Source: Octopus bimaculoides
Taxonomy: Eukaryota
Reading direction: 5' to 3'
NCBI RefSeq assembly: GCF_001194135.2
Contig: NC_068981.1
Coordinates: forward strand, 145,859,963 to 145,923,903
DNA length: 63,941 nucleotides
This document shows positions 1 to 35,852 of this stretch, one piece after another. The position numbers were made by a program, and so were the translations under genes. The notes beneath the pieces were generated by a model that worked only from the letters and a program-made list of their open reading frames with translations, had not been told where the DNA came from and made no database searches. Each line of letters starts with the position of its first letter. Within the stretch, counting starts at the first letter, position 1.

Positions 1-348
1 CGAACTCTAAAATTGTTACACACATAGATACGCACAGCGTAATTTATTATATAAACAATATATGCGTATAAATTACGATTAAACCGGATGAAATATGTCA
101 CAGGGAATAACATTTTTATGACCGCCCAGCAGTAACTCTATTCAGCTGAATAGACGTCAGTGATTGGTTGAAATTGCAGAAATATGACAACTTTAACATG
201 GAATAACTTGCGATGTACGTTTTTTTGTTAAGAAGACTAAGAGTAAAAGATGTTTTATATGACACATTCTACCAGTGTCCCAAGTTTCAAAGTGTTTCGT
301 TAGTGTTTCGTTACGAAAATACTGGTGCCCCCGTTTTGAAATAGATCC
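1..348 (+). mobile_element. Right half of a non-autonomous TIR element (Merlin-like MITE family, subfamily I)
   Basis: Ends in ctggtgcccccgttttgaaatagatcc (reverse-complement TIR) at 348; nearly identical to 12985-13340 and 13810-13923; left end outside the window. Confidence 0.8.
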
Positions 349-949
349 GTAAAATTTAATAAACTGCTCGAAACTAACATTCCATTTCGTGTTTACTGTT
401 GGTATTACCATTATTCAAGGCTATTTGAATATTGTAAAACCATAAGAAACTCTTCCAACAAAGAAAAAGAAAAAAATAATGCGCGTAATAGCTATGCAAG
501 GGAAGCTANNNNNNNNNNNNNNNNNNNNNNNNNNNNNNNNNNNNNNNNNNNNNNNNNNNNNNNNNNNNNNNNNNNNNNNNNNNNNNNNNNNNNNNNNNNN
601 NNNNNNNNCATCAGAAATATAGAAAAAGTCCAAAGAAGGGAAGACGGAAAAAGAAAATTGCCAACGATACATACGCGGTCACATATTGAAATGACCGGAA
701 GAGAATAGGTGAAGAAAAAGTTCTTTCAAAGACGAGAGTGCAAGAGAAGGAAGTATTTATGGGTATGTGCATGCGTGCAGGTCTCGTGTACGTGCATGTG
801 TGTGTAGCTGTGACTGTTTATGTATGTGTGCTTGGACTTAGTATCGTTTAAGGTCATAGGAAGAACTTATAGTAAGAATTTTGGTGGGAGTGGCTGTCTG
901 TTGTGTGTCTACCTACACATGTGCGAAGGAGAATGGTCAGTAGAAAGGT

Positions 950-2493
950 ACTGGTAGTTTGAAGTATGTGTGTGTGCGTGTATGTATATGTAGTGTGTGT
1001 GTGTGTGTGTATGTATGTATGTGTATACGTGTGAGGTGTCTGTGGTGTAATTGTACGTTACTCTGTGGGTGTGCGTGCGTGTGCGTGCTTGTATGTGCGT
1101 GTATGTGTGTACATGTATCTATAATTGTGTGCGTGTATGTATGAGTGTGTGCTGTGTGTGTATGAGCGGTATGTGTGGGNNNNNNNNNNGTGCGTGTATG
1201 TATGAGTGTGTGCTGTGTGTGTATGAGCGGTATGTGTGGGTTCATTTGCGTGTGCGTGTATGTGTGTGTATATATGTGTGTGTATATATGTGTGTGAGTG
1301 TACGTGCGTGTGTACATGTGTGTATATGTGAGTGTGCATTTTGTGTGTGTGCATGTGTGTGTGGGTGTGTATGTGTATGTGCGTGTCGTTGTGCGTGCGT
1401 GTGTATGTGTGCGCGTGTGTATGTGTTTGCGTGTGTGCGTGTGTGCGTATGCCGGTATGTATACATGTATGTGTGGGGTTGTGAGTGTCAGGTATGTGTG
1501 CATTCGTGTGCGTGCATATGTGTGCGCATCTGTATGTGTGCGTGTGTGTGTATGTGCGTCTATATGTGTATGTGTATGTGTGTGCGTGCATGTGTGTATA
1601 TATTCGATATGTGTGCATTCGTGTGCGTGTGTGCGTGCGTATGTGTGCGTATGTGTGTGCGTGCGTGTGTGTGTGTGTGCGTCTATATGTGTATGTGTGT
1701 GTGTGCGTGTATGTATATATTGTGTGTGTATGTATATGTATGTGTGTGGATGCGGGTGTGTATACGTGTATGTGTGGGGTTGTGAGTGTTAGGTATGTAT
1801 GCATTCGTGTGCATGCGTANNNNNNNNNNNNNNNNNNNNNNNNNNNNNNNNNNNNNNNNNNNNNNNNNNNNNNNNNNNNNNNNNNNNNNNNNNNNNNNNN
1901 NNNNNNNNNNNNNNNNNNNNNNNNNNNNNNNNNNNNNNNNNNNNNNNNNNNNNNNNNNNNNNNNNNNNNNNNNNNNNNNNNNNNNNNNNNNNNNNNNNNN
2001 NNNNNNNNNNNNNNNNNNNNNNNNNNNNNNNNNNNNNNNNNNNNNNNNNNNNNNNNNNNNNNNNNNNNNNNNNNNNNNNNNNNNNNNNNNNNNNNNNNNN
2101 NNNNNNNNNNNNNNNNNNNNNNNNNNNNNNNNNNNNNNNNNNNNNNNNNNNNNNNNNNNNNNNNNNNNNNNNNNNNNNNNNNNNNNNNNNNNNNNNNNNN
2201 NNNNNNNNNNNNNNNNNNNNNNNNNNNNNNNNNNNNNNNNNNNNNNNNNNNNNNNNNNATTGTGTGTTGGAGGTATATGTGCGTACATGTATGTGTATGT
2301 ACGTGTGTATATGTGCGTATGTGCGTGTGTATATGTGCGTGTGTGTGTATGTGCTTGTGTGCATGTGTGTATGTGCGTGCGTGTGTATATGTGTGTGAAC
2401 GTGGAGACATGTGTCGGGATATGTGTGCGTTTTGTTGCGTGTTTGCGCGTGTGCTTGAGTTTGTATGCGTATGTGGTTGTCTGTAGGTGTGTA

Positions 2494-2541
<48 letters not shown>

Positions 2542-2610
2542 GGTATGTGTGTCTGTGTGTGCGTGGGGTTGTGTGGGTTAAGTATCTGTGCATTCCTGTG
2601 CGTGTGTATC
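950..2610. repeat. Compound (TG/TA/CG) cryptic microsatellite tract with assembly gaps
   Basis: Alternating purine-pyrimidine sequence; source of many spurious H/T/C/V/Y-rich ORFs. Confidence 0.95.
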
Positions 2611-2734
2611 ACACTTAGATCAAGTTAATGGTTGCTACATCGCCAGCATCTTCATAGGATCTTCAGAGAACCTACCCATAGCCGCAATGAACTTTGCAAA
2701 AATCTCTGATCTCAATCTATCTTCCAATAAGTAA

Positions 2735-4503: not shown

Positions 4504-5044
4504 CTGAAATGAAATGATAAAAGAAAAATAGGAATTTATAAACATAGAGATGTGATATTCTTTTGTTTCAACATTCATCATCCTTAAACTTTAAGTTCGT
4601 TATCTTAATAGTACAGTCTCTTTAACCATGTAATCTCATACTGTGTTGTCATATCTGCATTCTATTCAGTGCAATGTGACAAATTGATATCACAATAAGA
4701 TAATATCTAAGTATTTGTTTGGGTCAAATATCTATAGACATTGCAGTTATTTAGCAGAGAAACATTTTAAAGTTTGCTATATATATTTAGATACAGTAAA
4801 AATGATTTAAAAAATAACTGCCTCAAACTACAACGGATAGGCTCTACGTGGTCACGCGTCCTTATTAGAAAAGTAGCTTAGTCTTCACTTAATCATATTC
4901 TACCAAATTAAATAAGGAGATAATGTTTTGGATACTGTAGCCCTACATATTTCTAAAAGACGAGGAGATCGCGACTGAAATGTTACTGGTGCCTTTTTAG
5001 CAAACCGTCTGCCTGGACATTTATACTTCAGCGTGAAGTCTATC

Positions 5045-5175
5045 ACGTTAACTCTAACGGTAAGCCGTAACTGTAACCCAAAACTCTAACTATAACTTAA
5101 AAACCCTGACCCTGATCCCTAACCCTAATCCAAGACCCTAACACAACCCAAAACCCTAGCCCATTCCTAACTCAG
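5045..5175 (+). repeat. Degenerate (TAACCC)n telomere-like tract
   Basis: ccctgaccctgatccctaaccctaatcc...ccctaac; probably the core of an old repeat. Confidence 0.6.
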
Positions 5176-6311: not shown

Positions 6312-8570
6312 TTTTCTCTTTCTCTTTTTAAATAGAATAAATTTTCACTGGTCCCTTACTTTGTAACAAGGGAGTGAAGGAAAGCAGCATATTTTACACA
6401 CCATCCTTTAAATATTAGGAGGGTCTTGCAGATTTTTATAGTCCCAGATATCATGATCATTTGTAGTGTATGATATAAGGAGTTGTGTTCACTCACCAAA
6501 ATCCTAAGTTTAGCCATTTTTTGCTCCAGACCGGTCGTTCCAATAATAATAGGTATCAACCTGAAACTGTATTTTGAGTATTGGATTTGCAAACTCATTA
6601 TCAATGGTAATGACATCTGGGTCTAGAGGCCAACTGATTTCCAGAACAAAACAAATGTTTTCCTTGTGGTCTCACACAACAATATATGACTTGTGTTTTA
6701 ACTTGGTTGTTATTTTAATTTTTAAGTTTCATCAATATTCCTGTTTTGACCCATCGGTCACAATATGCTCAATTTCATCTATAGGTGATTTCTGCTTTGC
6801 TATCCTGTTACAGACTGTTCTGGCCACTACATCATGCCTTTTGAGAAGATAATATCTGATAACACATTCTCCTGTAGTTGGCAATAACATGATTGATGTC
6901 TTCAGCCTTTATCTTTCACATTTGTTGTCAGTCATTTGTTATCTCTCAACGATTTTTGTCTTTAAATGCTGTAGGTTCTTGGTGGGAATCTCATGTTGTT
7001 ATACTACATGGAAGTAGCCTTCGAAGTGTGATGTCATAAACTTGTCAGTACTCCATGCTAAGCTTTTGACATGATAACTCCTTTCTATGGTTGTGTTTTT
7101 CAAGCCAAGTACTCATGTGCTATCTTCATAGTGAATCGGTCCCTTTTTTTATTCTGTTCTTATAAATAGACTTTACCTACGCGCCTTGGGAGAGATATGT
7201 ATCAGTTGTTATTCCATATCTCAAGTTCATTATCTAGTTCAACATTATGGGTTTCGCGGTCACAAACTTGGGAAAGATAGTTACTGGCCTCGTTCTTCTG
7301 TTGGAGTTGTTATTTCAGTGTCAAAATACGTGCTTCATATGACATTAATACAGATTTGAGACACGGCCACCATCCTTGCGTAGGAAGCATAACCTGTCTC
7401 CATTTTCCTTAATGTTCAAGTTTCCTGTAACACTGAGCAGTTTACGAGTTCGAACATCTATCTCATTGAGTGCTTCTACTGACCAGTTCAGAAGACCAGA
7501 CGTAGGCGTGGGAACAGGCATTGCAGAGGTGTTGTGGGCAATATGCTTTTTGTCAGCTGAGTATTCTAGGTCCTCTCCTTATTTATGGGTCCATTATGTC
7601 TGACATTCTCATCTTGACCAAGATACATATAATTGTCACATGACTACAAAGGTTGTATTGTCAAGCCGTTCATTTTTAGGTTTTCAGAAGAGGGCACAAC
7701 TTTTCCACGTCTTATTGTCAAATATACACATTTGAACTCACAAATTTCTTGCCAATGTCGGTAGAAAATTGTGCTGTGCAGTCCAGTTGGTTTTTTTTTT
7801 TTTTTTTTTGAGTAGTTGGTATTTGTCCAGTATAACTTCAGGTTGTCAATAAAGACAATACGGGAAATACTTCTGGATCCACTTCTAAGGTAACTATGCT
7901 TTGTGAACAGGTATGATAGACAGCTTAACGAGAGGACGAAGGGAAACACCAACAGACTATCACCCTGACAGATTCCTTTTTGGTAGCGAATGCTATCCAA
8001 CTCGATTTGCTCCTTATCACTCTTAAGGGTCAAAGTGGTTGTAGCACTTTGGCTAACTGTAAAACTCTTAAGGGTCACTAGTGGTTGTAGCACTTTGGCT
8101 GACTGTAAAACCCAAATAATCCACCCATGTGGTGTACTATCAAAAACCTTCTGGTAATCCAGTCATATTATAGTTAATTCCTTGCGATTTTTATTGTTTT
8201 TCCCTGGATCATTTTGTTGCTTAATTGCTGCTGTATACACCCATACACCTCTTATCCTCTAGCATGCTCAGGCCTTACAATGATGTTAAGGCTATTGGGC
8301 GGTAATGTTTAGCAAAGATAGTGTGGCTATTTTGGGAGGATGAGGAGAGTAGTTGCAATTGATAACCAATGGATCAGTTCTTGTGTCCTTGATCCTTTCT
8401 CCTTACGACTGTACGAGATCTCGCAGATAAAACGTGAAATTCTTCAACCAGGAACCCATTATGAGATCTGGGTCTGGAGATTTTCTGTTTGACATTTTTG
8501 TAAAACTGCTTCCAGTATTTCACCGTCTATTTTATATTGTTTTTACTTGTCATGCTGGCAGTAGTCCTGC
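6312..8570 (-). mobile_element. Degenerate R4/Dong-like (RLE) non-LTR retrotransposon
   Basis: RT remnants KGICQGDSL and IVFIDNLKLY (7644-8093); C-terminal IIPIIIGTTG...LQMIMISGTIKICK (6356-6616); many stops. 9540-10200 may be its 5' continuation (weak). Confidence 0.75.
8022..8110. repeat. About 45-bp tandem duplication
   Basis: ttaagggtca...gtggttgtagcactttggct.actgtaaaac occurs twice head to tail. Confidence 0.85.
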
Positions 8571-10253: not shown

Positions 10254-10416
10254 GAAAAGATTTTTTCTTACTAAAGATTTTCGTTTCATCTAATGATCCA
10301 TCAGATTATTTAGAAAAGAAGATGAATTTTCCAATATATATTTGGGAAAACCTTTGGGTATTTTAAGATTCGGTATAAAATGAAATATATGGTGAAAAAG
10401 AGGATTTATAAATTTA
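10254..10416. repeat. Left copy of a 163-bp direct duplication flanking the TIR element
   Basis: Matches 11233-11427 with about 7 substitutions and one ~11-nt indel. Confidence 0.85.
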
Positions 10417-11232
10417 GGATCTTTCTGAATTGACGGGCACCACTTGTTTTCTTAACGAAACACTTTCAAACTTGGGATACTGGTAGAATGTATCATATAA
10501 AACATCTTTTTCTCTTAGCCTTCTAAACAAAAATTTATATATTGCAAGTTATTTCATGTTAAAGTTGTCGTATTTCTGTAATTTCAACCAATCACTGACG
10601 TCTATTCGGCTGAATACAGTTACTGCTGTTTTTGTAAACAATAATTTTTGCCGGTGTCAAGATTGTTATTCTCTGTTAATCCCTATTAAGGGTTATTCCT
10701 AGTAAAAGTTATAACCCTAGTTATTCCTTAGTAAGGATTTAGGGTTTTAGGGTTAGGGTTCGGGTCTTAGAGTTAGGGTTAGGGTTTTAGGGTTACGGTT
10801 ACGGTTATGAGTTAGGTTATGGCAAAAATAATCATAACGTTAACCTAAACCCTAAAACTAACCCTAACTCTAAAATCATAAAGCTAAAACCAGTACAAAC
10901 GCACGAACGATGTCATAAATAACAGTACAACCGATAGCTGTTGTTGACAAACAACGGCACTAATTTTATTCAAGGGAAAAGATCCCATGACACTGTTAGA
11001 ATATGTTGTTTACATTCCACGGCAGTAATTGTTTTCACCTCAATAGACGTCAGTGATTGGTTGAAATTACCGAAATACGGCAATTTTTTACATGAAAAAA
11101 TTCGAATACAACATTTTTTATCTGTTCTATAACACAAAATATACAAGTATTCGAAGTTTGAAAGTGTTTCGGTACCAAAAACACTACATAAAACATAAAT
11201 GAAAAGTGGTGCCCGTCAATTCAGAATGATCC
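10417..11232 (-). mobile_element. Complete non-autonomous TIR element (Merlin-like MITE, subfamily II)
   Basis: 29-bp TIRs ggatctttctgaattgacgggcaccactt / aagtggtgcccgtcaattcagaatgatcc (1 mismatch), longer imperfect inverted arms, internal ttaggg/taaccc tracts; no ORF. Confidence 0.85.
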
Positions 11233-11427
11233 GAAAAGACTTTTTCTTACTAAAGATTTTCNNNNNNNNNNNNNNNNNNNAGACTTTTTCTTACTAAAGA
11301 TTTTCGTTTCATTAGATTATTTAGAAAAGAAGAGGAATTTACCAATATATATTTGGGAAAACGTGTGGGTAATTTAAGATTCGGTATAAAATGAAATATA
11401 TGGTGAAAAAGAGGATTTATAAATTTA
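11233..11427. repeat. Right copy of the 163-bp flanking duplication (interrupted by a small N gap)
   Basis: gaaaagac...ggatttataaattta repeats 10254-10416. Confidence 0.8.
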
Positions 11428-11998: not shown

Positions 11999-12548
11999 AA
12001 TTATGTTGTTTCCAATATGATAAGTTTTTTTTTTTGCCAATAGTTAGTGTATATAGACAAATGCTCCTAGATACACTCAAATTTTGTATGATTTAAGAGA
12101 AGTATGCAACGTGTATAAAAGTTACAAAGTAAATGACATACTGTAGAAAACTGAGAATTACAATCCTATATATAGACATTTAGAAAATTTATTTTCCATT
12201 GTTAGTCAAAATGCATTAAGTACCTTAGCATTAAAAAATTAATATCATAAATTAAAATCATTTCAATGCTTTTACAACTTGTGAATCATTTGTTTAACAA
12301 ATAAATGTTCTACATTATAAGATATCGATTATCTCTCCGTTGTTTACCTGGTTCATATTATTTAACTGCAGTTTTTTATGAATATAGATCAAGTTCCACT
12401 AAATTAAAACTCATGCAAATAATTGGCATTAAATGTCGTCAGTAATCTTGTGCTGTGTTACAGAATGCCGCTTAATGTATCCAGCGTTATTGTATTCATT
12501 TTGATCTTCATGTGTCACTTTTTTCGTTATAACAGTGTTCTCAGTTTA

Positions 12549-13923
12549 GGATCTATTTCAAAACGGGAGCACCAGTTTTCATTTATGTTTTATGTAGTGT
12601 TTTTGGTACCGAAAGACTTTCAAACTTCGTATACTTATCTATTTTGTGTTATAGAACAGAAAAAAAATTTTGTATTCGAATTTATTTCATGTAAAAAATT
12701 GTCTTATTTCGATAATTTCTACTAATCACTGACGTCTATTCAGTTGAAAACAGTTAGCGCTGTAACGGTGTATATCGTATTAATCCCCCAACCCTANNNN
12801 NNNNNNTTTCATGTAAAAAATTGTCTTATTTCGATAATTTCTACTAATCACTGACGTCTATTCAGTTGAAAACAGTTAGCGCTGTAACGGTGTATATCGT
12901 ATTAATCCCCCAACCCTAACCCTAACCCTAACTAGACTGTTAACCCTAACCTTAACCCTAAAACTAACCCTAACTCTAGAATCCGAACTCTAAAATTGTT
13001 ACACACGTAGATACGCACAGCGTAATTTATTATATAAACAATATATGCGTATAAATTGCGATTAAACCGGATGAAATATGTCACAAGGAATAACATTTGG
13101 ATCTATTTCAAAACGGTGGCACCAGTATTTTCTTAACGAAACACTAACGAAACACTTTGAAACTTGGGACACTGGTAGAATGTGTCATATAAAACATCTT
13201 TTACTCTTAGTCTTCTTAACAAAAAAAACGTACATCGCAAGTTATTCCATGTTAAAGTTGTCGTATTTCTGTAATTTCAACCAATCACTGACGTCTATTC
13301 AGCTGAATAGAGTTACTGCTGGGCGGTCATAAAAATGTTAGGATCTATTTCAAAACGGGGGCACCAGTTATCATTTATGTTTTATGTAGTGTTTTTGGTA
13401 CCGAAACACTTTCAAACTTCGTATACTTATCTATTTTGTGTTATAGAACAGAAAAAAAATTTTGTATTCGAATTTATTTCATGTAAAAAATTGTCTTNNN
13501 NNNNNNNNNNNNNNNNNNNNNNNNNNNNNNNNNNNNNNNNNNNNNNNNNNNNNNNNNNNNNNNNNNNNNNNNNNNNNNNNNNNNNNNNNNNNNNNNNNNN
13601 NNNNNNNNNNNNNNNNNNNNNNNNNNNNNNNNNNNNNNNNNNNNNNNNNNNNNNNNNNNNNNNNNNNNNNNNNNNNNNNNNNNNNNNNNNNNNNNNNNNN
13701 NNNNNNNNNNNNNNNNNNNNNNNNNNNNNNNNNNNNNNNNNNNNNNNNNNNNNNNNNNNNNNNNNNNNNNNNNNNNNNNNNNNNNNNNNNNNNNNNNNNN
13801 NNNNNNNNAGACTAAGAGTAAAAGATGTTTTATATGGCACATTCTACCAGTGTCCCAAGTTTCAAAGTGTTTCGTTAGTGTTTCGTTAAGAAAATACTGG
13901 TGCCCCCGTTTTTAAATAGATCC
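12549..13923 (+). mobile_element. Composite Merlin-like MITE (partial copy + inverted arm + second copy) with 8-bp TSD
   Basis: TSD tcagttta at 12541-12548 and 13924-13931; GGATC TIR starts at 12549, 13099 and 13341; terminal gatcc at 13923; internal taaccc tract 12910-12975. Confidence 0.85.
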
Positions 13924-15480
13924 TCAGTTTATCTGTACTTGTAACGTATGCAATACATCAACCAATCTCTGAACCGATCATTATCGCCCTGCTGTCACAA
14001 ACGTAATGCCTTTCAATTAAAATTGGGCAATCTTTAAATAACACCTGTCACATATTAGGGAAACTGGAAGCTATACAATTAACTTATTTGTAATTTTGCA
14101 TGTAATAAACATTCCCTATTAATATTTATAAAGGTAGTTCAATGATGTTTTACTGAGTATTACATATCCATAAAAGGCACTAAAGAGACATCATAAAGAT
14201 AGATTATTCTTAATTAGAAGTCCGAAATGTGACAAGTTACTTCTTTGTAAATTGCAAGTTACAAAAAAAAAAAAATGGAAAAAATGATAACCCAAAATGA
14301 AAGTGTCAATAAACGCTTGATGATATAAATAAATTTGGGTTATATTTTGTATAAGAAATAAAAAAAAAAGAAGTAAAATAGCGAGACGAGTTTCAAGGAA
14401 TGAAATCCCTAGATTAAAACCACCTCTTAAGAGAGATGACAACAACCGTGAGAGGATGAGAATTAGCAGAAAGAGGAGTCACTCAATTATGTTAAGAGGA
14501 GACACAAGAGAAGAATGTTCAGCAGAATAACAACTATGGAAGTATTTACGAAACAGAGAGAGAGAGAAAAAGGAAGTAATGCTTCTGCAATGTGAGTTTT
14601 CCAATGGGAAAGTATCGGATTGAGGTTTAAATAATTTAATTAAACGACACTTGCATTTACTTGTTGTATACACCAAAAAATTCACTACATGTTATTACCA
14701 ACTTACTTCGAGTTGGCGAAGAAGAAAATAACAGGGGAAATACTGTGTCGATATGATGAGGTAGAACCGGGCATGTTTTGTGTCTGTGTGTGCGTTGATC
14801 ATTCAGTGGTGTCTGATTATGTTCTGCGACTGCCACTGTGTTGGGTCGTTCATGCTGAATATGTGGTTCTCTGTTGGGTGCTTAACTGGCGCAAGGCTGT
14901 CTCTTGACAGTTCGCCTGGTGATGGCTTTCTGCCTCTATCGTATGTCTGACTGTATTTATAATGGTCATGACAGAAGGACAGACATACCACAGGAGTAAT
15001 CTTTACCTATGTAGGTCGCCTCCTGTCCACTTGAACCTTAAATGACACGGCTCCGGTCGTAGGTCGAAGAGAAAACCATCCATCACTTTTTGATAGGACA
15101 AAGAAATTTCTTTCGTGCCAGTTTGGCCAGTTGTGGATCAGACGAGCGAGAATCCTTAGATTCGGTTTCGAACCTCAGCTCGGAAAAAGGAAGTGTTAGT
15201 TTTTACAGAAACAACCTTTATAGTGGCTGATTTCGCCGTCGGTGTAATATAATCAGTGAGATGAAAAGAGTTTACATGGGGATCACTAAACTACTTTAAT
15301 TCGTTTCTTTATCTATTGTCATCAGATTTCTTATTTTTGCATATATACGTAACACGAGACTGGTTTCAAACAAGAAGCATTTATTTGCAAACTAAAGGCA
15401 ATAATTCTTTTACCCATATGACAATGATACATATATAATTACTACTGTATATTTAGTCTATTCAAATTTATTGTAGTTCT

Positions 15481-16259: not shown

Positions 16260-17830
16260 TAAAATCTGTGATTGCTTGCTTGCGTGCTTGTCTGTAATTT
16301 AACACAGCCAAATCGGCGCATAATGGGAAAATACTCTGAAAAAACCCCTGAAATGTGAATACAAACAGAATAAAACAAATTTTGCGTAAATCAGATTACG
16401 AATTCCCGAGATACTCGTTTTTTTTTTTTTTTTCGTTTCCACAACTTTAAGCAGTGAACCCGGCGCATAAAAGGGAAATACTTTGAAAGTAAAGTGCCTC
16501 TGAAATGGGAATACCAACGGAACACGACAAATTTCGCGTAAGTCGTACCACAGGTTTCCGAGATACGCAGTGTTTTGTGTGGTAAGTTTATAAATAGCCA
16601 AACCGGCGCAAAACGGATGGAGTGAGGGTTTAATTCGGACCCCACGATCCCCGCCTCGCCGCTGATGCCTGGGATAGTCCTGTGTCGCATTCATGAGGGT
16701 ACATTCATACGCAACATTCGTGCAACATTCTTACATCGATTTTCGAACATTTTCACTGTCAGGCATTTTCTCTCTAGCCCTATTTTCCTTTTAAGGTGAA
16801 AGGTGAAGTAATTCACCAATGTAGAGCCAGAGATGAAGATGTCTGACTTTAAACCTTTCAATCTCGTCTTCCAAATCACTTCTCTTGCAATTGCTACTAC
16901 GACGAGAAAACTAATCTTACCTTCTTTCAATAGGAAATCCGGTGTGTCAATTTTTACTATAGACTCAGTCGATAGCCGTACTCTTCGTGTACTTGACAAC
17001 AGTTGTTCCGCACAAAGCCACACGTCTGACACCTCCGAACACTGAGCAATAGCATGCAGGACGGTTTCCCNNNNNNNNNNNNNNNNNNNNNNNNNNNNNN
17101 NNNNNNNNNNNNNNNNNNNNNNNNNNNNNNNNNNNNNNNNNNNNNNNNNNNNNNNNNNNNNNNNNNNNNNNNNNNNNNNNNNNNNNNNNNNNNNNNNNNN
17201 NNNNNNNNNNNNNNNNNNNNNNNNNNNNNNNNNNNNNNNNNNNNNNNNNNNNNNNNNNNNNNNNNNNNNNNNNNNNNNNNNNNNNNNNNNNNNNNNNNNN
17301 NNNNNNNNNNNNNNNNNNNNNNNNNNNNNNNNNNNNNNNNNNNNNNNNNNNNNNNNNNNNNNNNNNNNNNNNNNNNNNNNNNNNNNNNNNNNNNNNNNNN
17401 NNNNNNNNNNNNNNNNNNNNNNNNNNNNNNNNNNNNNNNNNNNNNNNNNNNNNNNNNNNNNNNNNNNNNNNNNNNNNNNNNNNNNNNNNNNNNNNNNNNN
17501 NNNNNNNNNNNNNNNNNNNNNNNNNNNNNNNNNNNNNNNNNNNNNNNNNNNAAGCGGTTTCGAGCCCCCTCCACAAGAAGTGGAACAGCTGTCTTTCCAG
17601 CTTGATTAACCACGAATCAGGGCAAGGAACGACGGTTAAGCGGTAGGTGATGACCGATGCGATGAACATATTGGCCACCTCCACCCTTCCTTTTAGGGAT
17701 AGCCACCGCCAAGACCAGGTCTTGACTATGTGGGTTACCCTGCTCGATACCTCGGCCCAGTTCTTCTCCATTTAGAGGTCCAGACCAAACCAAACTCCTA
17801 GCAACTTAATCGGACCCTGCTTCAACGAAA
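16260..17830 (-). mobile_element. Tx1/L1-clade LINE: ORF2 C-terminal remnant plus 3' UTR
   Basis: KLLGVWFG...MEKNWAEVSSRV...WSWRWLSLKGRVEVANMFIASVITYRL...LFHFLWRG and AIAREVIWKTR, typical of the Tx1 post-RT region; gap 17071-17550. Confidence 0.8.
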
Positions 17831-17849: not shown

Positions 17850-19620
17850 AACAAACAACAGCAAAAACAATCGCAACTCACCGTAACAATTCAACAAATT
17901 ACACAAGAAGCACAGTAAACACATTCTTATAACAAGAGACTTGCACTAAGAACAAGGAAAATTTTTAATCACCCATAAGGGGCCGATATAGAGGGAACAA
18001 CACAAAAACATGTGGGGGCACATAACACGAAAAATATAAAATTAAAAATATGGTAACAAGAATGATATATGAAAATGAAACCTGGAAATGAGCTGCTTGC
18101 CCCACCTCAAGCAGCAACACTTACTTCCTTCTGAATCCTGAGTCCTTCAAAACGTCCAATCCGAATTTTTCTCTCAGTTCTTCATATCCTACTTTTACCG
18201 GTATCCTTTTCAAGTTCACATAAGTTTTCCAATACTTATAACCTTTTTTTCATATTTTACAATCACTTCCTTCTGGCTCTGAGACACCAGCACACACACA
18301 TGTGCCAACCCACAACATTAGTATATCCCTCCACATTCACAAATCTTGCTGTCTTCCACCTTGTTGCCTCATTTATTAGTTCCTCGTCTACATCCTCTGT
18401 TAACACACATACATAGCTATTTTCACGGGAGGGGGGAGTTTTTGTGTATCTTGTGATGTCTGTTTTTCTCTCTTTTTTTTACATTGTGAAGGAAAGGAAT
18501 ACGTGGGTTTGGTGTCTGTGGGGAGAGGGTGGGTCTGAGAGGTTATGGGTGTGGTGGGAATGACTTGGGGTTCCACATCACACTGTCCTTTCTTCTTCTT
18601 TTTCCTTCTTCCCTCTGCCACTGTCCATAATTCTTCCTTTTTCCTTTCTTCCATCTGTACCTCCTCTTGCTTCTTCTCCGACTCTTTATCCACTTTTTCC
18701 AGACTATGATTCTGCAGAGGGTAGTGTGCTCTAATGTGACCCTTTTGACCACATTTAAAGCAGCGAGGGATTCTGCTCTCCACCCACACTCTCAAGATTA
18801 TGTCTCCTACAGTCACCGTCTCCGCCAAATCTTCCAAGGATTCTACTTCAGCTTGAACAATAAGTTCTGATGTTTTTCCTTTCCACATCACCTCCTCCGT
18901 TTCCGTGGTTTGGAGGACGGCCACTTTCTCCTCACTTCCAAGGAGGATAGATGCTGCAACCCAAGTCACATCTATGTCTGGCGGGATTCCCTCTACCCTG
19001 ATCTTGGATGTCCTCCTTCCAAGCTACATGGGTAGAAGGACTACTTTATTCGACTTCACTGTGTTTACAGCCAGCCTCCTTGTTACTTCCTCCGTCTTAA
19101 ACTGGACTACCACCGTCCCATATTTGCTTCCTCTTGCTAAAAACACCATATCCTTAGATACCGCGCACAACGCCTTCTCAATTGTTTCGGCTTCTACTTG
19201 ATCTACCTTTTTCTGTTCCACTGAATAAACTTTGCACACAATGGTACTCTTCATCATGTCTTCCATACCTTTCTGGAGGCGACAACTTTACGTCACCACT
19301 TTATGCGCCATTTTTTGATGTTCTTCCATTTTAGACAATTCTATTTCATTCCTTTTTAAATCTGTTACCTCAACGAAGTTCTTTGTTTGTTTCCAAAACA
19401 TCTGTCCATTCTGTTTACTGCTGCTGAAGTGGACAATTCCAACCCGCTAATGTCCGAATAGAGCATTTTTTTCATTAGCCATTGCTATCTCTCTTGAAAC
19501 AGAGAGAAAACACAACCGGTAAACCGCTGCAAAGCAGCACAAAAATCAACACTTCAATACAACTCAATACACGTTCAAAAAATACGACTTGCACTAAGAA
19601 TAAAGAAAAATGTAAAATTA
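17850..19620 (-). mobile_element. Tx1-like ORF1 (gag-like, zinc knuckle) element, disabled
   Basis: One frame 19328-18400 with in-frame stops (PM*LGRRTSKIRVEGIPP) and CFKCGQKGHIRAH knuckle; further frameshifted coding to ~18110; no endonuclease or RT follows. Confidence 0.7.
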
Positions 19621-20384: not shown

Positions 20385-20560
20385 ATATAAGGCGAAGGTA
20401 GATAGATGAACAACAAGCAGGTGTATAAGTCTGACGCTCGGGAAAGTGAGAAAGTCTAACGTTTCGAGCCTACACTCTTCAACAGAAAGGAATAAAAGAA
20501 AATGAACAGAGAGAAAATAAAAATAAAAACTTGTGGATTTAGCTATCAGTCATGGCGGCT
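20385..20560 (-). mobile_element. Short Penelope-like pLTR-type repeat with hammerhead-like core
   Basis: Minus strand cctttctgttgaagagtgtaggctcgaaacgttagact. Confidence 0.4.
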
Positions 20561-20699
20561 AATANNNNNNNNNNNNNNNNNNNNNNNNNNTATATATATA
20601 TATATATATATATATATGGGTAGCATGGCATCATCAGTAACAATAATGACGATATTGGATCTGACACCAACCATGAAATTGGCAAAACCAGAGACTGTG

Positions 20700-21175
20700 C
20701 ACTATCTAGTCCCCCAACACTGTCCGTCACAGACACGTGTGCGACTCTATAATAGCATAGATTCTGCAACCATTCATTATGCCTGTAAAACATGGAACAG
20801 CACCGTGAAAATCAACAGAAACCTAACTGTATTCCACCAAAGAAGCTTGAGAAGATTTCTGAGAACATATCGGCTAGACCACATAATAAATGAAGACATT
20901 CTAAAGAGAGACAACATAAGGCCACCTCGCAAAATTACCAAAGAACAAAGATTAAAACTAGCAGGTCACGTGCCCTGTCAGCCAGAACGACACTGTTCTA
21001 AAACAGCTTTCAAATGGACACCACCAGAAGACACCCCAAAAAACAACGGAAATTATATGGTGCAGAGCATTCATAACCAACATGAGAGAGGACAATATCA
21101 CATCGTCAAATTTAGAGAAAACTGCAGCCAAAAGAAACCAATGGTATCAGCTTTATACTGAATGTATTCGAAAGC
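20700..21175 (+). mobile_element. RTE-type LINE 3' ORF fragment
   Basis: TRVRLYNSI...YACKTW...FHQRSLRRFL...RLKLAGHV...AFKWTPP. Confidence 0.8.
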
Positions 21176-28479: not shown

Positions 28480-28688
28480 ATATGTGTGTGAGTGTGTGTG
28501 TGTGTGTGTTGCAGCTGCCACCCGAAAGTGAGAATAACTAATTAGATTTGCGAATCCACATCCATACTCANNNNNNNNNNTGTGTGTGTTGCAGCTGCCA
28601 CCCGAAAGTGAGAATAACTAATTAGATTTGCGAATCCACATCCATACTCATTTTTTAGTAACTGCAATGTGTAACTGTGTGTGTGTGT

Positions 28689-28900: not shown

Positions 28901-29484
28901 TAATGACTATAGAATGTAATCTCCGATTTTTTAAACCTTCAAAGAATGTGAAAAGTGAATGTTTTTGAAAGGCGGTCGGGGAGAGGGACGAAAATATTCA
29001 AACTTAGAAATCATTTTTTCCCCCTGATTTTGAAGACTCATGGTCTACCTTAGAAACAGTAACCTGAAGAAATTTTCAGAAAGAAAAAGAAATGAATTGG
29101 CGAATTTTACAAAGTTTCCACTTTATTCGCCTTCGCTAGGAAACAGCTAACTTTAAAGAATAACGATAAATTTCTTTTTTTTTACTTTGAAATTGTGAGT
29201 GGAATGGAATACTTGCGTCCTTGAACAAGACACTTCCTAAAATAAATACCTAATAAGTTTTTATAAGAGGAGAAGGGCTATTATATAACTTTTGCGTATT
29301 CCATATAAAGTTAAGGAAAGACTTCCGCTCACCCCTACCCCATTTTCTCCCAAATTTATTCTTTTACTTGTTTCAGTCATTTGACTGCGGCCATGCTGGA
29401 GCACCGCCTTTAGTCGAGAAAACTCCCGTTTTCGGATATGGAGGTTCCGGAAAATTACCAAAAATCGGCATTGTTAAATTTTCC

Positions 29485-29845
29485 GGATCTTTATGGTTTA
29501 ACGGCCAACATTTTTTTATGTAGTGTTTTTGGTACCGAAACACTTTCAAACTTCGAATACTTGTATATTTTGTGTTATAGAACAGATAAAAAATTTTGTA
29601 TTCGAAGTTATTTCATGTAAAAAATTGTCGTATTTCGGTAATTTCAACCAATCACTGACGTCTATTGAGGTGAAAACATTTACGCCGTGGAATGTAAACA
29701 ACGGTGTCAGGGGATCTTTTCCCTTGAATAAAATTAGTGCCGTTGTTTGTCAACAAAAACTATCCGTTGTTAACAACAACTCTCAGCAGTATATATTTCG
29801 TTTGTCACTGTTATTTATGACATCGTTCGTGCGTTTGTACTGGTT
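29485..29845 (+). mobile_element. Merlin-like MITE subfamily II, left part (remainder in gap)
   Basis: Starts ggatctttatggtttaacggccaaca; matches the reverse complement of 10890-11200. Confidence 0.75.
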
Positions 29846-35000: not shown

Positions 35001-35237
35001 TCTTACATGCCTCATAAAAGACACAATGGTCACAGCTAGAATGTCTTTGATCATAGATATCTGCTCAGAACTAAGCAGCACCCATATATCCAATTCCATC
35101 AGATAAAACTCTCTACTTGACAAGATGTAATTGAAAATCTTTGAAATAACTCTGTAAGACACTTTAAGAGATTGTCTCATTGAAGTTTAGAAGAATCATT
35201 ACAGAAAATATTTTAATTTTTTTTGTTTTTATTTCAG

Positions 35238-35425
35238 ATATCTGTGATGAAACTTCTATAATAAAAGCTAAAGAAGCAGTTGAAAATGAAGTAGAAGACA
35301 ATGGGTTAAACTTATTGATTAACAATGCTGGTTTGAAATTGAGTATTACTTTTGAAAAACTCAACTTTGATTCTATGATGGAAGCCTTCAAAACCAATGC
35401 TGTTGCTCCAAGTGTTTTGACTAGG
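35238..35425 (+). CDS. C-factor-like SDR, exon 3
   Basis: Acceptor tttcag; (D)ICDETSI...GLNLLINNAG...FKTNAVAPSVLTR; donor gtaagt. Confidence 0.93.
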
Positions 35426-35464
35426 GTAAGTTGTTTTTTTTGTTCCCTTCTTTTATTTTTGTTT

Positions 35465-35852
35465 GCTTCTGTCTTTAAACTGTGGCCATGCTGTGGCACC
35501 ACCTTGAAGAAATTTTGGTCGAATGAGTCAACCCCAGTACTTATTTTTCTTTTGTTTTTTAAGCCTGGTACTTATTTTATCGATCTCTTTTGCCAAACCG
35601 TTAAGTTACAGGGATGTAAACACCCCAACACCAGTTGTTAAGCAGTAGTGGGGCACAAACAACAGACACAACCCCCCCCCCCCTCCACACACACACACAA
35701 CGAGCTTCTTTCAGTTTCTATCTTCCAAATCCACTCACAAACTTTTGGTTGGCCAGAGGCTATAGTAGAAGATACTCACACAAGGTACCACACGGTGGGA
35801 CTGAACCCGAAACAGTGTGGTTGAAAAGCAAGCTTCTTACCAGACAGCCATG
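35465..35852 (-). mobile_element. tRNA-derived SINE family B
   Basis: Reverse complement of the family best seen at 62550-62927. Confidence 0.75.

What the first reader, a model, noticed from the sequence alone, without database searches (positions are those of the whole stretch)
12541..13931. Self-inserted transposon: inverted arm bounded by a duplicated 8-bp internal target
Seen: relative to the intact copy at 1-348 (taacattt at 108-115 followed by the arm), the arm here is inverted (13099-13340). It is preceded by taacattt (13091-13098) joined to a GGATC TIR, and ends in the reverse complement aaatgtta (13333-13340) joined to a second GGATC TIR (13341). The original TSD tcagttta still brackets the whole composite. 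Inference: one event explains all of it, with the right end of one sister copy and the left end of the other inserted into an 8-bp target inside the element itself (hybrid-element or reversed-ends transposition, as known for P and Ac/Ds). With the duplication at 10254-11427, that makes two such events within 4 kb, suggesting a family that actively restructures its neighbourhood.
Basis: partly seen in the sequence, partly recalled or inferred. Interest (0 to 1): 0.75.

Follow-up and report, generated by a model that had tools for sequence, protein, structure and literature searches.

The report
Transposon copy nested inside its twin

Summary
Every letter-level claim checks out. The 8-bp duplication tcagttta is at 12541-48 and 13924-31. 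There are four GGATC termini. 13099-13340 is the reverse complement of 108-348 (97.9%). taacattt and aaatgtta abut termini at 13098/13099 and 13340/13341. The element is about 662 bp, with a 28-bp terminal inverted repeat (TIR) starting GG and an 8-bp target duplication, which fits Merlin rather than hAT or P.

An ordinary insertion of a second copy, inverted, at taacattt gives L t R' t' L' t R. The two differ only in the orientation of a 436-bp segment between 242-bp inverted arms, and their k-mer content is identical up to k=243. That segment is mostly the 311-N gap.

Both junctions lie on one 691-bp contig made only of repeat, whose first and last 21 nt are identical, so it is a cyclic graph walk. 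The 10-N gap is an unmerged 112-bp overlap.

The family fills about 5% of the window, so nested insertions are expected. I favour an ordinary "double-Ds-like" nested insertion (about 0.55) over hybrid-end self-insertion (about 0.2). The copies differ by about 2%, so the event is not recent.

The parts
12541..12548 (+). Left copy of the outer 8-bp target-site duplication, tcagttta
   Evidence: Read directly. It is identical to 13924-13931.
12549..12576 (+). 28-bp terminal inverted repeat (left terminus) of the outer/host copy, starting 5'-GGATC
   Evidence: TIR positions 1-28 against 635-662, 92.9%.
12549..13090 (+). Left part (L) of the host element up to the internal target. The true length is 420 bp once the duplicated 122 columns are removed.
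12797..12806 (.). Spurious 10-N gap. The flanks 12685-12796 and 12807-12918 are the same 112 bp, an unmerged contig overlap.
12908..12978 (+). Degenerate (CCCTAA)n telomere-like array in the centre of the element
12807..13497 (+). The single contig that carries both diagnostic junctions. It is family sequence only. Its first and last 21 nt are identical, so it is a cyclic walk of period 670 = (L t)(R' t').
13091..13098 (+). Internal 8-bp target taacattt (t), abutting a GGATC terminus at 13099
   Evidence: It corresponds to 108-115 of the reference copy.
13099..13332 (-). Right arm (R) in inverted orientation. Its TIR is at 13099-13126 and carries a private T at 13117.
   Evidence: 97.9% to 116-348 reverse complement.
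13333..13340 (-). aaatgtta, the reverse complement of the target (t'), abutting a GGATC terminus at 13341
13341..13497 (+). First 157 bp of a second left arm (3 differences from 12549-12705). Its orientation relative to the flanks is the undecided point.
13498..13808 (.). Real assembly gap (311 N). About 389 bp of element interior is expected under either model.
   Evidence: with arithmetic.
13809..13923 (+). Last 115 bp of the right arm in forward orientation, with the right terminus ...AAATAGATCC
13924..13931 (+). Right copy of the outer 8-bp target-site duplication, tcagttta
1..348 (+). Reference copy of the same family, cut by the window start. It shows the canonical order L-end, taacattt, R, terminus.

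Best explanation
This is an ordinary nested insertion. One copy of a roughly 662-bp non-autonomous TIR transposon sat at this locus. The element has a 28-bp TIR starting 5'-GG and an 8-bp TSD, so it is Merlin-like. The host copy's TSD is tcagttta. A second copy of the same family then inserted into it in the opposite orientation at the internal 8-mer taacattt and duplicated that 8-mer.

The true order would then be L t [R' t' L'] t R. This is the layout of the maize 'double Ds'. It puts two 242-bp right arms in inverted orientation around a 436-bp stretch. A short-read assembler cannot orient that stretch, and the scaffold shows one of three equally valid graph walks. That walk happens to mimic a hybrid-end self-insertion.

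Shown: the two junctions, the two TSDs, the element anatomy, the exact equivalence of the two structures, and the contig artefacts.

Inferred: that the true orientation is the nested one.
For: They interconvert exactly by flipping the 436-bp inter-arm segment.
- the contig holding both junctions (12807-13497) is repeat-only. It is the only one of 16 contigs whose first 21 nt equal its last 21 nt, so it is a cycle of period 670.
- this assembly leaves unmerged overlaps at all of its 10-N and 19-N gaps, so repeats here are not cleanly resolved.
- there are four loci of the family in 64 kb (about 4.8% of the read bases). Hitting another copy by normal transposition is therefore expected to be common.
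- all differences among copies are private. The two halves of the composite differ by 3/157 and 3/115, which is no closer than each is to the unrelated copy at 1-348. This fits two independent copies.
- PMC3260210: nested Ds and double Ds are a known class.
Against: - The assembly as written shows the other isomer. If the assembler used read pairs or long reads across the 242-bp arm, that orientation could be correct.
- The scaffold length between the flanks (1375 - 122 columns, with 311 N against 389 bp expected) fits two copies under either model, so it does not favour this one.
- The preference for this model rests on prior frequency and on the assembly's weakness, not on a direct observation of L'.
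Confidence: 0.55

Rival explanations
1. One reading: alternative transposition using hybrid ends. After replication, transposase pairs the right end of one sister copy with the left end of the other. It inserts them into taacattt inside the first copy. This inverts the t-R fragment and gives L t R' t' L t R with an inverted pair of the 8-bp target. The other chromatid is left with an empty site. The mirror product, L t R t' L' t R, is a third valid reading of the same data.
For: - The assembled order is exactly this product.
- Termini are joined precisely to an 8-bp duplicated target, which indicates a transposase rather than template switching.
- The outer TSD is intact.
- The mechanism is documented for Ac (sister-chromatid transposition) and for P (hybrid element insertion), and both prefer nearby targets.
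Against: - Nothing in the sequence is specific to it, because every k-mer up to 243 is shared with a plain nested insertion.
- The deciding segment is mostly gap and lies on a cyclic, repeat-only contig.
- The sister-derived halves should have been identical at the event but differ by 1.9-2.6%. They share no derived variant.
- The TIR and TSD hallmarks point to Merlin, for which I know of no report of such events (own knowledge, not searched); the P and Ac analogies are across superfamilies.
- The expected rate is lower than that of normal insertion into an abundant family.
Confidence: 0.2
2. Nested inverted insertion as in the best explanation, followed by a real inversion of the 436-bp stretch through homologous recombination between the two 242-bp inverted right arms. 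In this case the assembled order is true but has a two-step, ordinary origin.
For: - One search shows that the flip converts one structure into the other exactly.
- The arms are about 97-98% identical. They are long enough for occasional intrachromosomal recombination over the time implied by about 2% divergence.
Against: It needs two events. Recombination between 242-bp repeats is rare. There is no direct evidence, and the product is indistinguishable from that of hybrid-end insertion.
Confidence: 0.07
3. The 691-bp contig does not belong here. The locus holds a single ordinary copy. A repeat-only contig assembled from a nested pair elsewhere, or from collapsed reads of many copies, was dropped into the scaffold through its 112-bp overlap with the left arm.
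For: - The contig has no unique sequence, and its only tie to the locus is an overlap inside the repeat.
- In a single copy, the distance from the end of the left contig (element position 248) to the start of the right contig would be 298 bp. That is close to the 311 N written.
Against: - The 311 N lie between the middle and right contigs, not between left and right.
- The scaffold span (691 - 112 + 311 = 890 bp) is nearer the 968 bp expected for two copies.
- The 112/112 exact overlap fits the local copy.
- The junctions would still need one of the other explanations at their true locus.
Confidence: 0.12

Closest known systems
Maize 'double Ds' and nested Ds elements (one Ds inserted in inverted orientation into an identical Ds)
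   Same: It is a same-family, inverted, nested insertion. Both guest termini abut an 8-bp duplication of host-internal sequence, and the host TSD is intact. It creates long inverted repeats of transposon ends. PMC3260210 notes that nested Ds elements exist and acquire chromosome-breaking properties.
   Different: The superfamily differs: the termini here are 5'-GG with a 28-bp TIR, not the Ac/Ds 11-bp CAGGGATGAAA type. The element is a 662-bp MITE-like sequence in an animal-type genome. The assembled orientation of the inner left part is the opposite of double Ds, and that could not be verified.
Sister-chromatid transposition of Ac, hybrid element insertion of P, and the composite insertions they make
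   Same: If the assembled order is true, the product is what these reactions give when the target lies inside the donor element. There is an inverted fragment bounded by an inverted pair of the 8-bp target, and transposon inverted duplications like those in the 'Ac killer' alleles (bioRxiv 10.1101/2020.01.07.897926; PMC3429523).
   Different: The published cases were proven genetically, with reciprocal products and footprints. Here no reciprocal product is visible. The structure has an ordinary isomer that the data cannot exclude, and the element does not carry hAT or P termini.
Merlin superfamily non-autonomous elements (MITEs)
   Same: The TIR is 28 bp (Merlin range 24-462), the terminal dinucleotide is 5'-GG, and the TSD is 8 bp. 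These are the hallmarks quoted in PMC8101967.
   Different: There is no transposase (DDE_Tnp_IS1595) in the element or found in the window, so the assignment rests on termini only. The internal (CCCTAA)n array is not a described Merlin feature as far as I know.
Autointegration (suicidal self-insertion) of excised cut-and-paste transposons such as Sleeping Beauty, piggyBac, mariner and Tn10
   Same: Transposon ends attack a target inside the element itself, giving inversion-type products with TSDs (PMC3952818).
   Different: Autointegration of a fully excised element yields extrachromosomal inversion or deletion circles. It does not yield a chromosomal composite that is still bracketed by the original TSD.

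Membership tests
Hybrid-end (sister-chromatid / hybrid element) self-insertion product | Two transposon termini are joined precisely to the two sides of one 8-bp target, which is thereby duplicated. | tested here: met
   taacattt|GGATC is at 13098/13099 and aaatgtta|GGATC at 13340/13341. A plain nested insertion predicts the same thing.
Hybrid-end (sister-chromatid / hybrid element) self-insertion product | The order is L t R' t' L t R: after the inverted arm comes a forward left arm on the same molecule, at this locus. | tested here: inconclusive
   The order is written so in the scaffold. However, it rests on a repeat-only cyclic contig plus a 311-N gap, and the alternative has an identical k-mer spectrum up to k=243.
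Hybrid-end (sister-chromatid / hybrid element) self-insertion product | The duplicated halves derive from one element, so they should be more alike than independent copies or share derived variants. | tested here: not met
   L1 against L2 differs at 3/157 and the two right arms at 3/115. This is the same as against the unrelated copy at 1-348. All differences are private. The test is weak, because an old event would erase the signal.
Hybrid-end (sister-chromatid / hybrid element) self-insertion product | A reciprocal product or excision footprint exists on the other chromatid. | not testable with these tools
   It segregated away at the time of the event.
Nested same-family insertion, inverted ('double-Ds-like') | Both guest termini abut a direct 8-bp duplication of host-internal sequence, and the host TSD is intact. 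| tested here: met
   Both junctions are present. On one strand they read t|TIR and TIR'|t. The outer tcagttta pair is intact.
Nested same-family insertion, inverted ('double-Ds-like') | The guest is collinear: the inverted right arm is followed by the inverted left part. | tested here: inconclusive
   The scaffold shows the opposite orientation for the 157 read bases of the inner left arm. That orientation is not resolvable from sequences shorter than 244 bp.
Nested same-family insertion, inverted ('double-Ds-like') | The total length equals two elements plus 8 bp. | tested here: inconclusive
   The expected length is 1332 bp. The scaffold gives 1375 - 122 = 1253 bp with 311 N where 389 bp are needed. 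This is consistent but depends on the gap estimate.
Merlin superfamily | The TIR is 24-462 bp with a conserved terminal 5'-GG. | tested here: met
   The TIR is 28 bp, GGATCTATTTCAAAACGGGGGCACCAGT. The criterion is from PMC8101967.
Merlin superfamily | The TSD is 8 or 9 bp. | tested here: met
   tcagttta (outer) and taacattt (inner) are both exact 8-mers.
Merlin superfamily | The cognate transposase is of the DDE_Tnp_IS1595 type. | not testable with these tools
   The element has no long ORF. No autonomous copy was identified. The window was not scanned frame by frame.
   The 8-bp TSD is met, but the termini read GGATC, with G at position 2 and C at position 5.
   The termini read GGATCTATTTC.

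The most novel reading that the evidence does not exclude
The assembled order is correct. It would then record a natural hybrid-end (sister-copy) transposition in which a Merlin-like MITE inserted its own two ends into an 8-bp site inside itself. That would be an alternative-transposition product so far demonstrated experimentally only for hAT and P elements. It would leave a 242-bp inverted duplication of the transposon end that could seed hairpin small RNAs against the family.
Probability: 0.2. Interest if true: 0.5.

Novelty: new member of a known kind. Interest (0 to 1): 0.22.

Why it matters
Mainly as a caution. For any transposon family, a same-family inverted nested insertion and a hybrid-end self-insertion are inversion isomers with identical short-read content. 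An "inverted pair of target duplications next to two termini" in a draft assembly is therefore not evidence of alternative transposition.

If long reads did confirm the assembled order, it would be a rare natural footprint of sister-copy transposition outside hAT and P.

Under either model the locus carries a 242-bp inverted repeat of transposon ends. Structures of this kind act as silencing triggers in maize (Mu killer and Ac killer).

Tried and rejected
- **Other assemblies by exact ORF:** I looked up the 84-aa ORF across junction 13098/13099 and a 189-aa ORF at 18400-18969. Neither is on record.
- **Family copies elsewhere:** I scanned the metagenome contigs with the TIR pattern and with a 31-mer arm core and got 0 hits. 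Protein-word searches with the junction ORF and with an SDR-like ORF returned nothing. The organism and genome-wide copy number therefore stay unknown.
- **Rfam on the whole window:** no match.
- **SNP phasing of the two halves**: all variants are private, so this does not discriminate.
- **Rejected, nested insertion in direct orientation plus an assembler switch inside the 28-bp TIR:** its k-mer content already differs at k=21. The private T at 13117 also ties the junction at 13098/13099 to the right-arm body.
- **Rejected, replication template switching or hairpin repair:** the breakpoints fall exactly at element termini with an 8-bp duplicated target, which is a transposase signature.
- **Rejected, autointegration of an excised copy:** it gives circles, not a chromosomal composite.
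- **Rejected, shifting the boundary to a 6-bp TSD with an AGGATC terminus:** the junction at 13098/13099 has T, not A, before GGATC.
Full report
**Observation**

The window is a gap-rich, 37% GC draft scaffold with 15 N-runs.
- tcagttta lies at 12541-12548 and 13924-13931.
- The 18-mer GGATCTATTTCAAAACGG occurs five times in 64 kb against 0.04 expected. The sites are 12549(+), 13099(+), 13341(+), 13906-13923(-) and 331-348(-).
- 13099-13340 is the reverse complement of 108-348 over 242 bp at 97.9%. 12984-13098 matches 1-115 at 97.4%.
- taacattt (13091-98) and its complement aaatgtta (13333-40) each abut a GGATC terminus.

**Gaps, tested first**

The 10-N run at 12797-12806 is not a gap. The 112 bases before it and the 112 bases after it are identical. 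All three 10-N runs and the 19-N run in the window show the same kind of exact unmerged overlap, of 51, 112, 70 and 25 bp. So 122 columns of the finding are artefact, and the left part of the element is 420 bp plus the 8-bp target.

The 311-N run at 13498-13808 is a real hole. It is entered at element position 157 and left at right-arm position 119. A canonical interior would be 389 bp.

**Anatomy of the element**

Merging the pieces gives a 662-bp element with these features:
- a 28-bp TIR starting 5'-GG;
- an 84-bp subterminal inverted repeat (131-214 against 440-522, 82%);
- a degenerate (CCCTAA)n centre;
- no ORF of note.

The copy at 1-348 shows the canonical order of left-part end, taacattt, right arm. 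A diverged relative at 10418-11232 carries one left-type and one right-type arm and a terminus at each end. The family occupies four loci in the window, about 4.8% of the read bases.

The terminal 5'-GG, the 28-bp TIR and the 8-bp TSD are the hallmarks given for Merlin elements in PMC8101967. The termini do not fit hAT or P consensus ends; those criteria come from my own knowledge. No transposase was available to test.

**The central point**

Write the element as L t R. The scaffold reads L t R' t' L [gap] R between the outer TSDs. It joins the right end of one sister copy and the left end of the other into t, and I derived the same product.

However, an ordinary insertion of a second copy in inverted orientation at t gives L t [R' t' L'] t R. 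Because the reverse complement of (t' L' t) is (t' L t), the two structures differ only in the orientation of the 436-bp stretch between the two 242-bp inverted right arms.

I built both in silico from the assembled pieces:
- Their canonical k-mer spectra are identical for every k tested up to 243. They differ at k=250, the next value tested.
- Flipping the inter-arm segment converts one into the other exactly.
- A nested insertion in direct orientation differs already at k=21, so it is excluded.

A third walk of the same graph, L t R t' L' t R, is equally valid. It follows that both diagnostic junctions exist under all of these models. Only molecules or read pairs spanning a whole arm can.

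**How much the scaffold's choice is worth**

Both junctions and the 157 read bases of the second left arm lie on one 691-bp contig, 12807-13497.
- It contains nothing but family sequence.
- It is tied to the locus only by the 112-bp overlap inside the repeat.
- It is the only one of 16 contigs in the window whose first 21 nt equal its last 21 nt. It is therefore a cycle of period 670 = (L t)(R' t'), cut open at an arbitrary point.

The rest of the deciding segment is the 311-N gap. I therefore give the written orientation little weight.

The private T at 13117 and the private variants at 13360 and 13370 make each junction itself credible. Again, that is true under every model.

**Other discriminators**

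The differences among copies are all private: L1 against L2 is 3/157, and the two right arms differ at 3/115. Each copy is as far from the other as from the unrelated copy at 1-348. This is what two independent copies would show. An old sister-copy event would look the same. Either way the event is not recent.

No external data could be brought in:
- Exact-ORF look-ups found nothing.
- Metagenome scans found nothing.
- Protein-word searches found nothing.
- Rfam found nothing.

**Weighing the models**

Normal transposition into another copy should be common for a family that fills several percent of the local sequence. Half of such hits are inverted. Hybrid-end events are a minority reaction even in Ac and P, and they would also have to hit the 662-bp donor itself.

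Combining that prior with an assembler that probably chose among three equivalent walks, I estimate:
- about 0.55 for a plain nested, double-Ds-like insertion that is mis-oriented in the scaffold;
- about 0.2 for hybrid-end self-insertion;
- about 0.07 for nesting followed by a real flip through recombination between the arms;
- about 0.12 for the middle contig not belonging at this locus at all.

The scaffold span of 890 bp between the left and right contigs is nearer the 968 bp of two copies than the 298 bp of one. That argues mildly against the last option.

The structure at 10254-11427 is not a second event of the same kind.
- It is a different subfamily element, with TIR GGATCTTTCTGAATTGACGGGCACCAC and arms about 91% identical to this family's.
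- It is flanked by a direct duplication of about 152-164 bp, bounded exactly at the termini.
- The two copies of that duplication differ by 6 substitutions and a 12-bp indel.
- A simple sister-chromatid insertion into the re-joined donor chromatid predicts a doubled 8-bp TSD at the far end of the right copy, and that is absent.

I leave it unexplained. "A family that actively restructures its neighbourhood" is not supported.

**Comparison with known systems**

The favoured structure is the layout of maize double Ds and nested Ds (PMC3260210). The assembled structure is the product expected from sister-chromatid transposition or hybrid element insertion (PMC3429523, bioRxiv 10.1101/2020.01.07.897926). 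Autointegration of an excised element gives circles instead (PMC3952818).

Under any model the locus carries a 242-bp inverted repeat of transposon ends. That is the kind of structure that triggers silencing in the Mu killer and Ac killer cases.

**Verdict**

This is a real pair of same-family transposon copies, probably an ordinary nested insertion. The exotic reading is not excluded, but nothing specific supports it.

Noticed in passing
window 10254-11427: A diverged relative of the element lies at 10418-11232 in inverted orientation. It is flanked by a direct duplication of about 152-164 bp whose boundaries coincide exactly with the two termini. The two copies differ by 6 substitutions and a 12-bp indel. 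There is no 8-bp TSD, and there is no doubled TSD as a simple sister-chromatid event would leave. The origin is unexplained. Possibilities are widely staggered end insertion, alternative transposition, or an assembly artefact.
   Followed up: partly
window 1180-1189, 11262-11280, 12797-12806, 28571-28580: Every 10-N and 19-N run is flanked by an exact unmerged overlap (51, 25, 112 and 70 bp). These 'gaps' are contig overlaps that the assembler did not merge. Each one adds a false tandem duplication to the scaffold.
   Followed up: yes
window 12908-12978; 10739-10816 and 10835-10889; 5040-5170: Degenerate telomere-type hexamer arrays sit inside the transposon family. This element has (CCCTAA)n in its centre. 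The relative has TTAGGG-like and CCCTAA-like arrays head to head. Another degenerate CCCTAA-like stretch lies near 5040-5170, outside any recognised copy.
   Followed up: partly
window 29476-29845: A third relative of the family, with terminus GGATCTTTATGGTTTAACGG and a left-type arm 92-96% identical to this family's, runs into the 836-N gap. Its other end and its TSD are unread.
   Followed up: no
window 10296-10311 against 11324-11328: The 12-bp indel between the two flanking-duplication copies lies in a stretch reading CTAATGATCCATCAGA in the left copy. That stretch contains GATCC, the family's terminal pentamer. It could be an old excision footprint or coincidence.
   Followed up: no
window 937-2630: A long degenerate (CA/TG)n-rich microsatellite tract spans two gaps. 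It produces long spurious ORFs of the THTHTH or CVCVCV type in all frames.
   Followed up: no
window 7644-8093, 16299-17771, 18400-18969, 20502-21161: ORFs with what look, by eye, like reverse-transcriptase or LINE-like motifs, and an ORF with a CCHC zinc-knuckle-like motif. I read them as retroelement debris. They were not scanned against any profile library. The 189-aa ORF is not on record in the gene-position collection.
   Followed up: partly
window 35180-35641: An ORF with a short-chain-dehydrogenase-like stretch (LLINNAGL...) may be an exon. A 63-aa query from it found no protein sharing words in the 5.8-billion-protein collection.
   Followed up: partly
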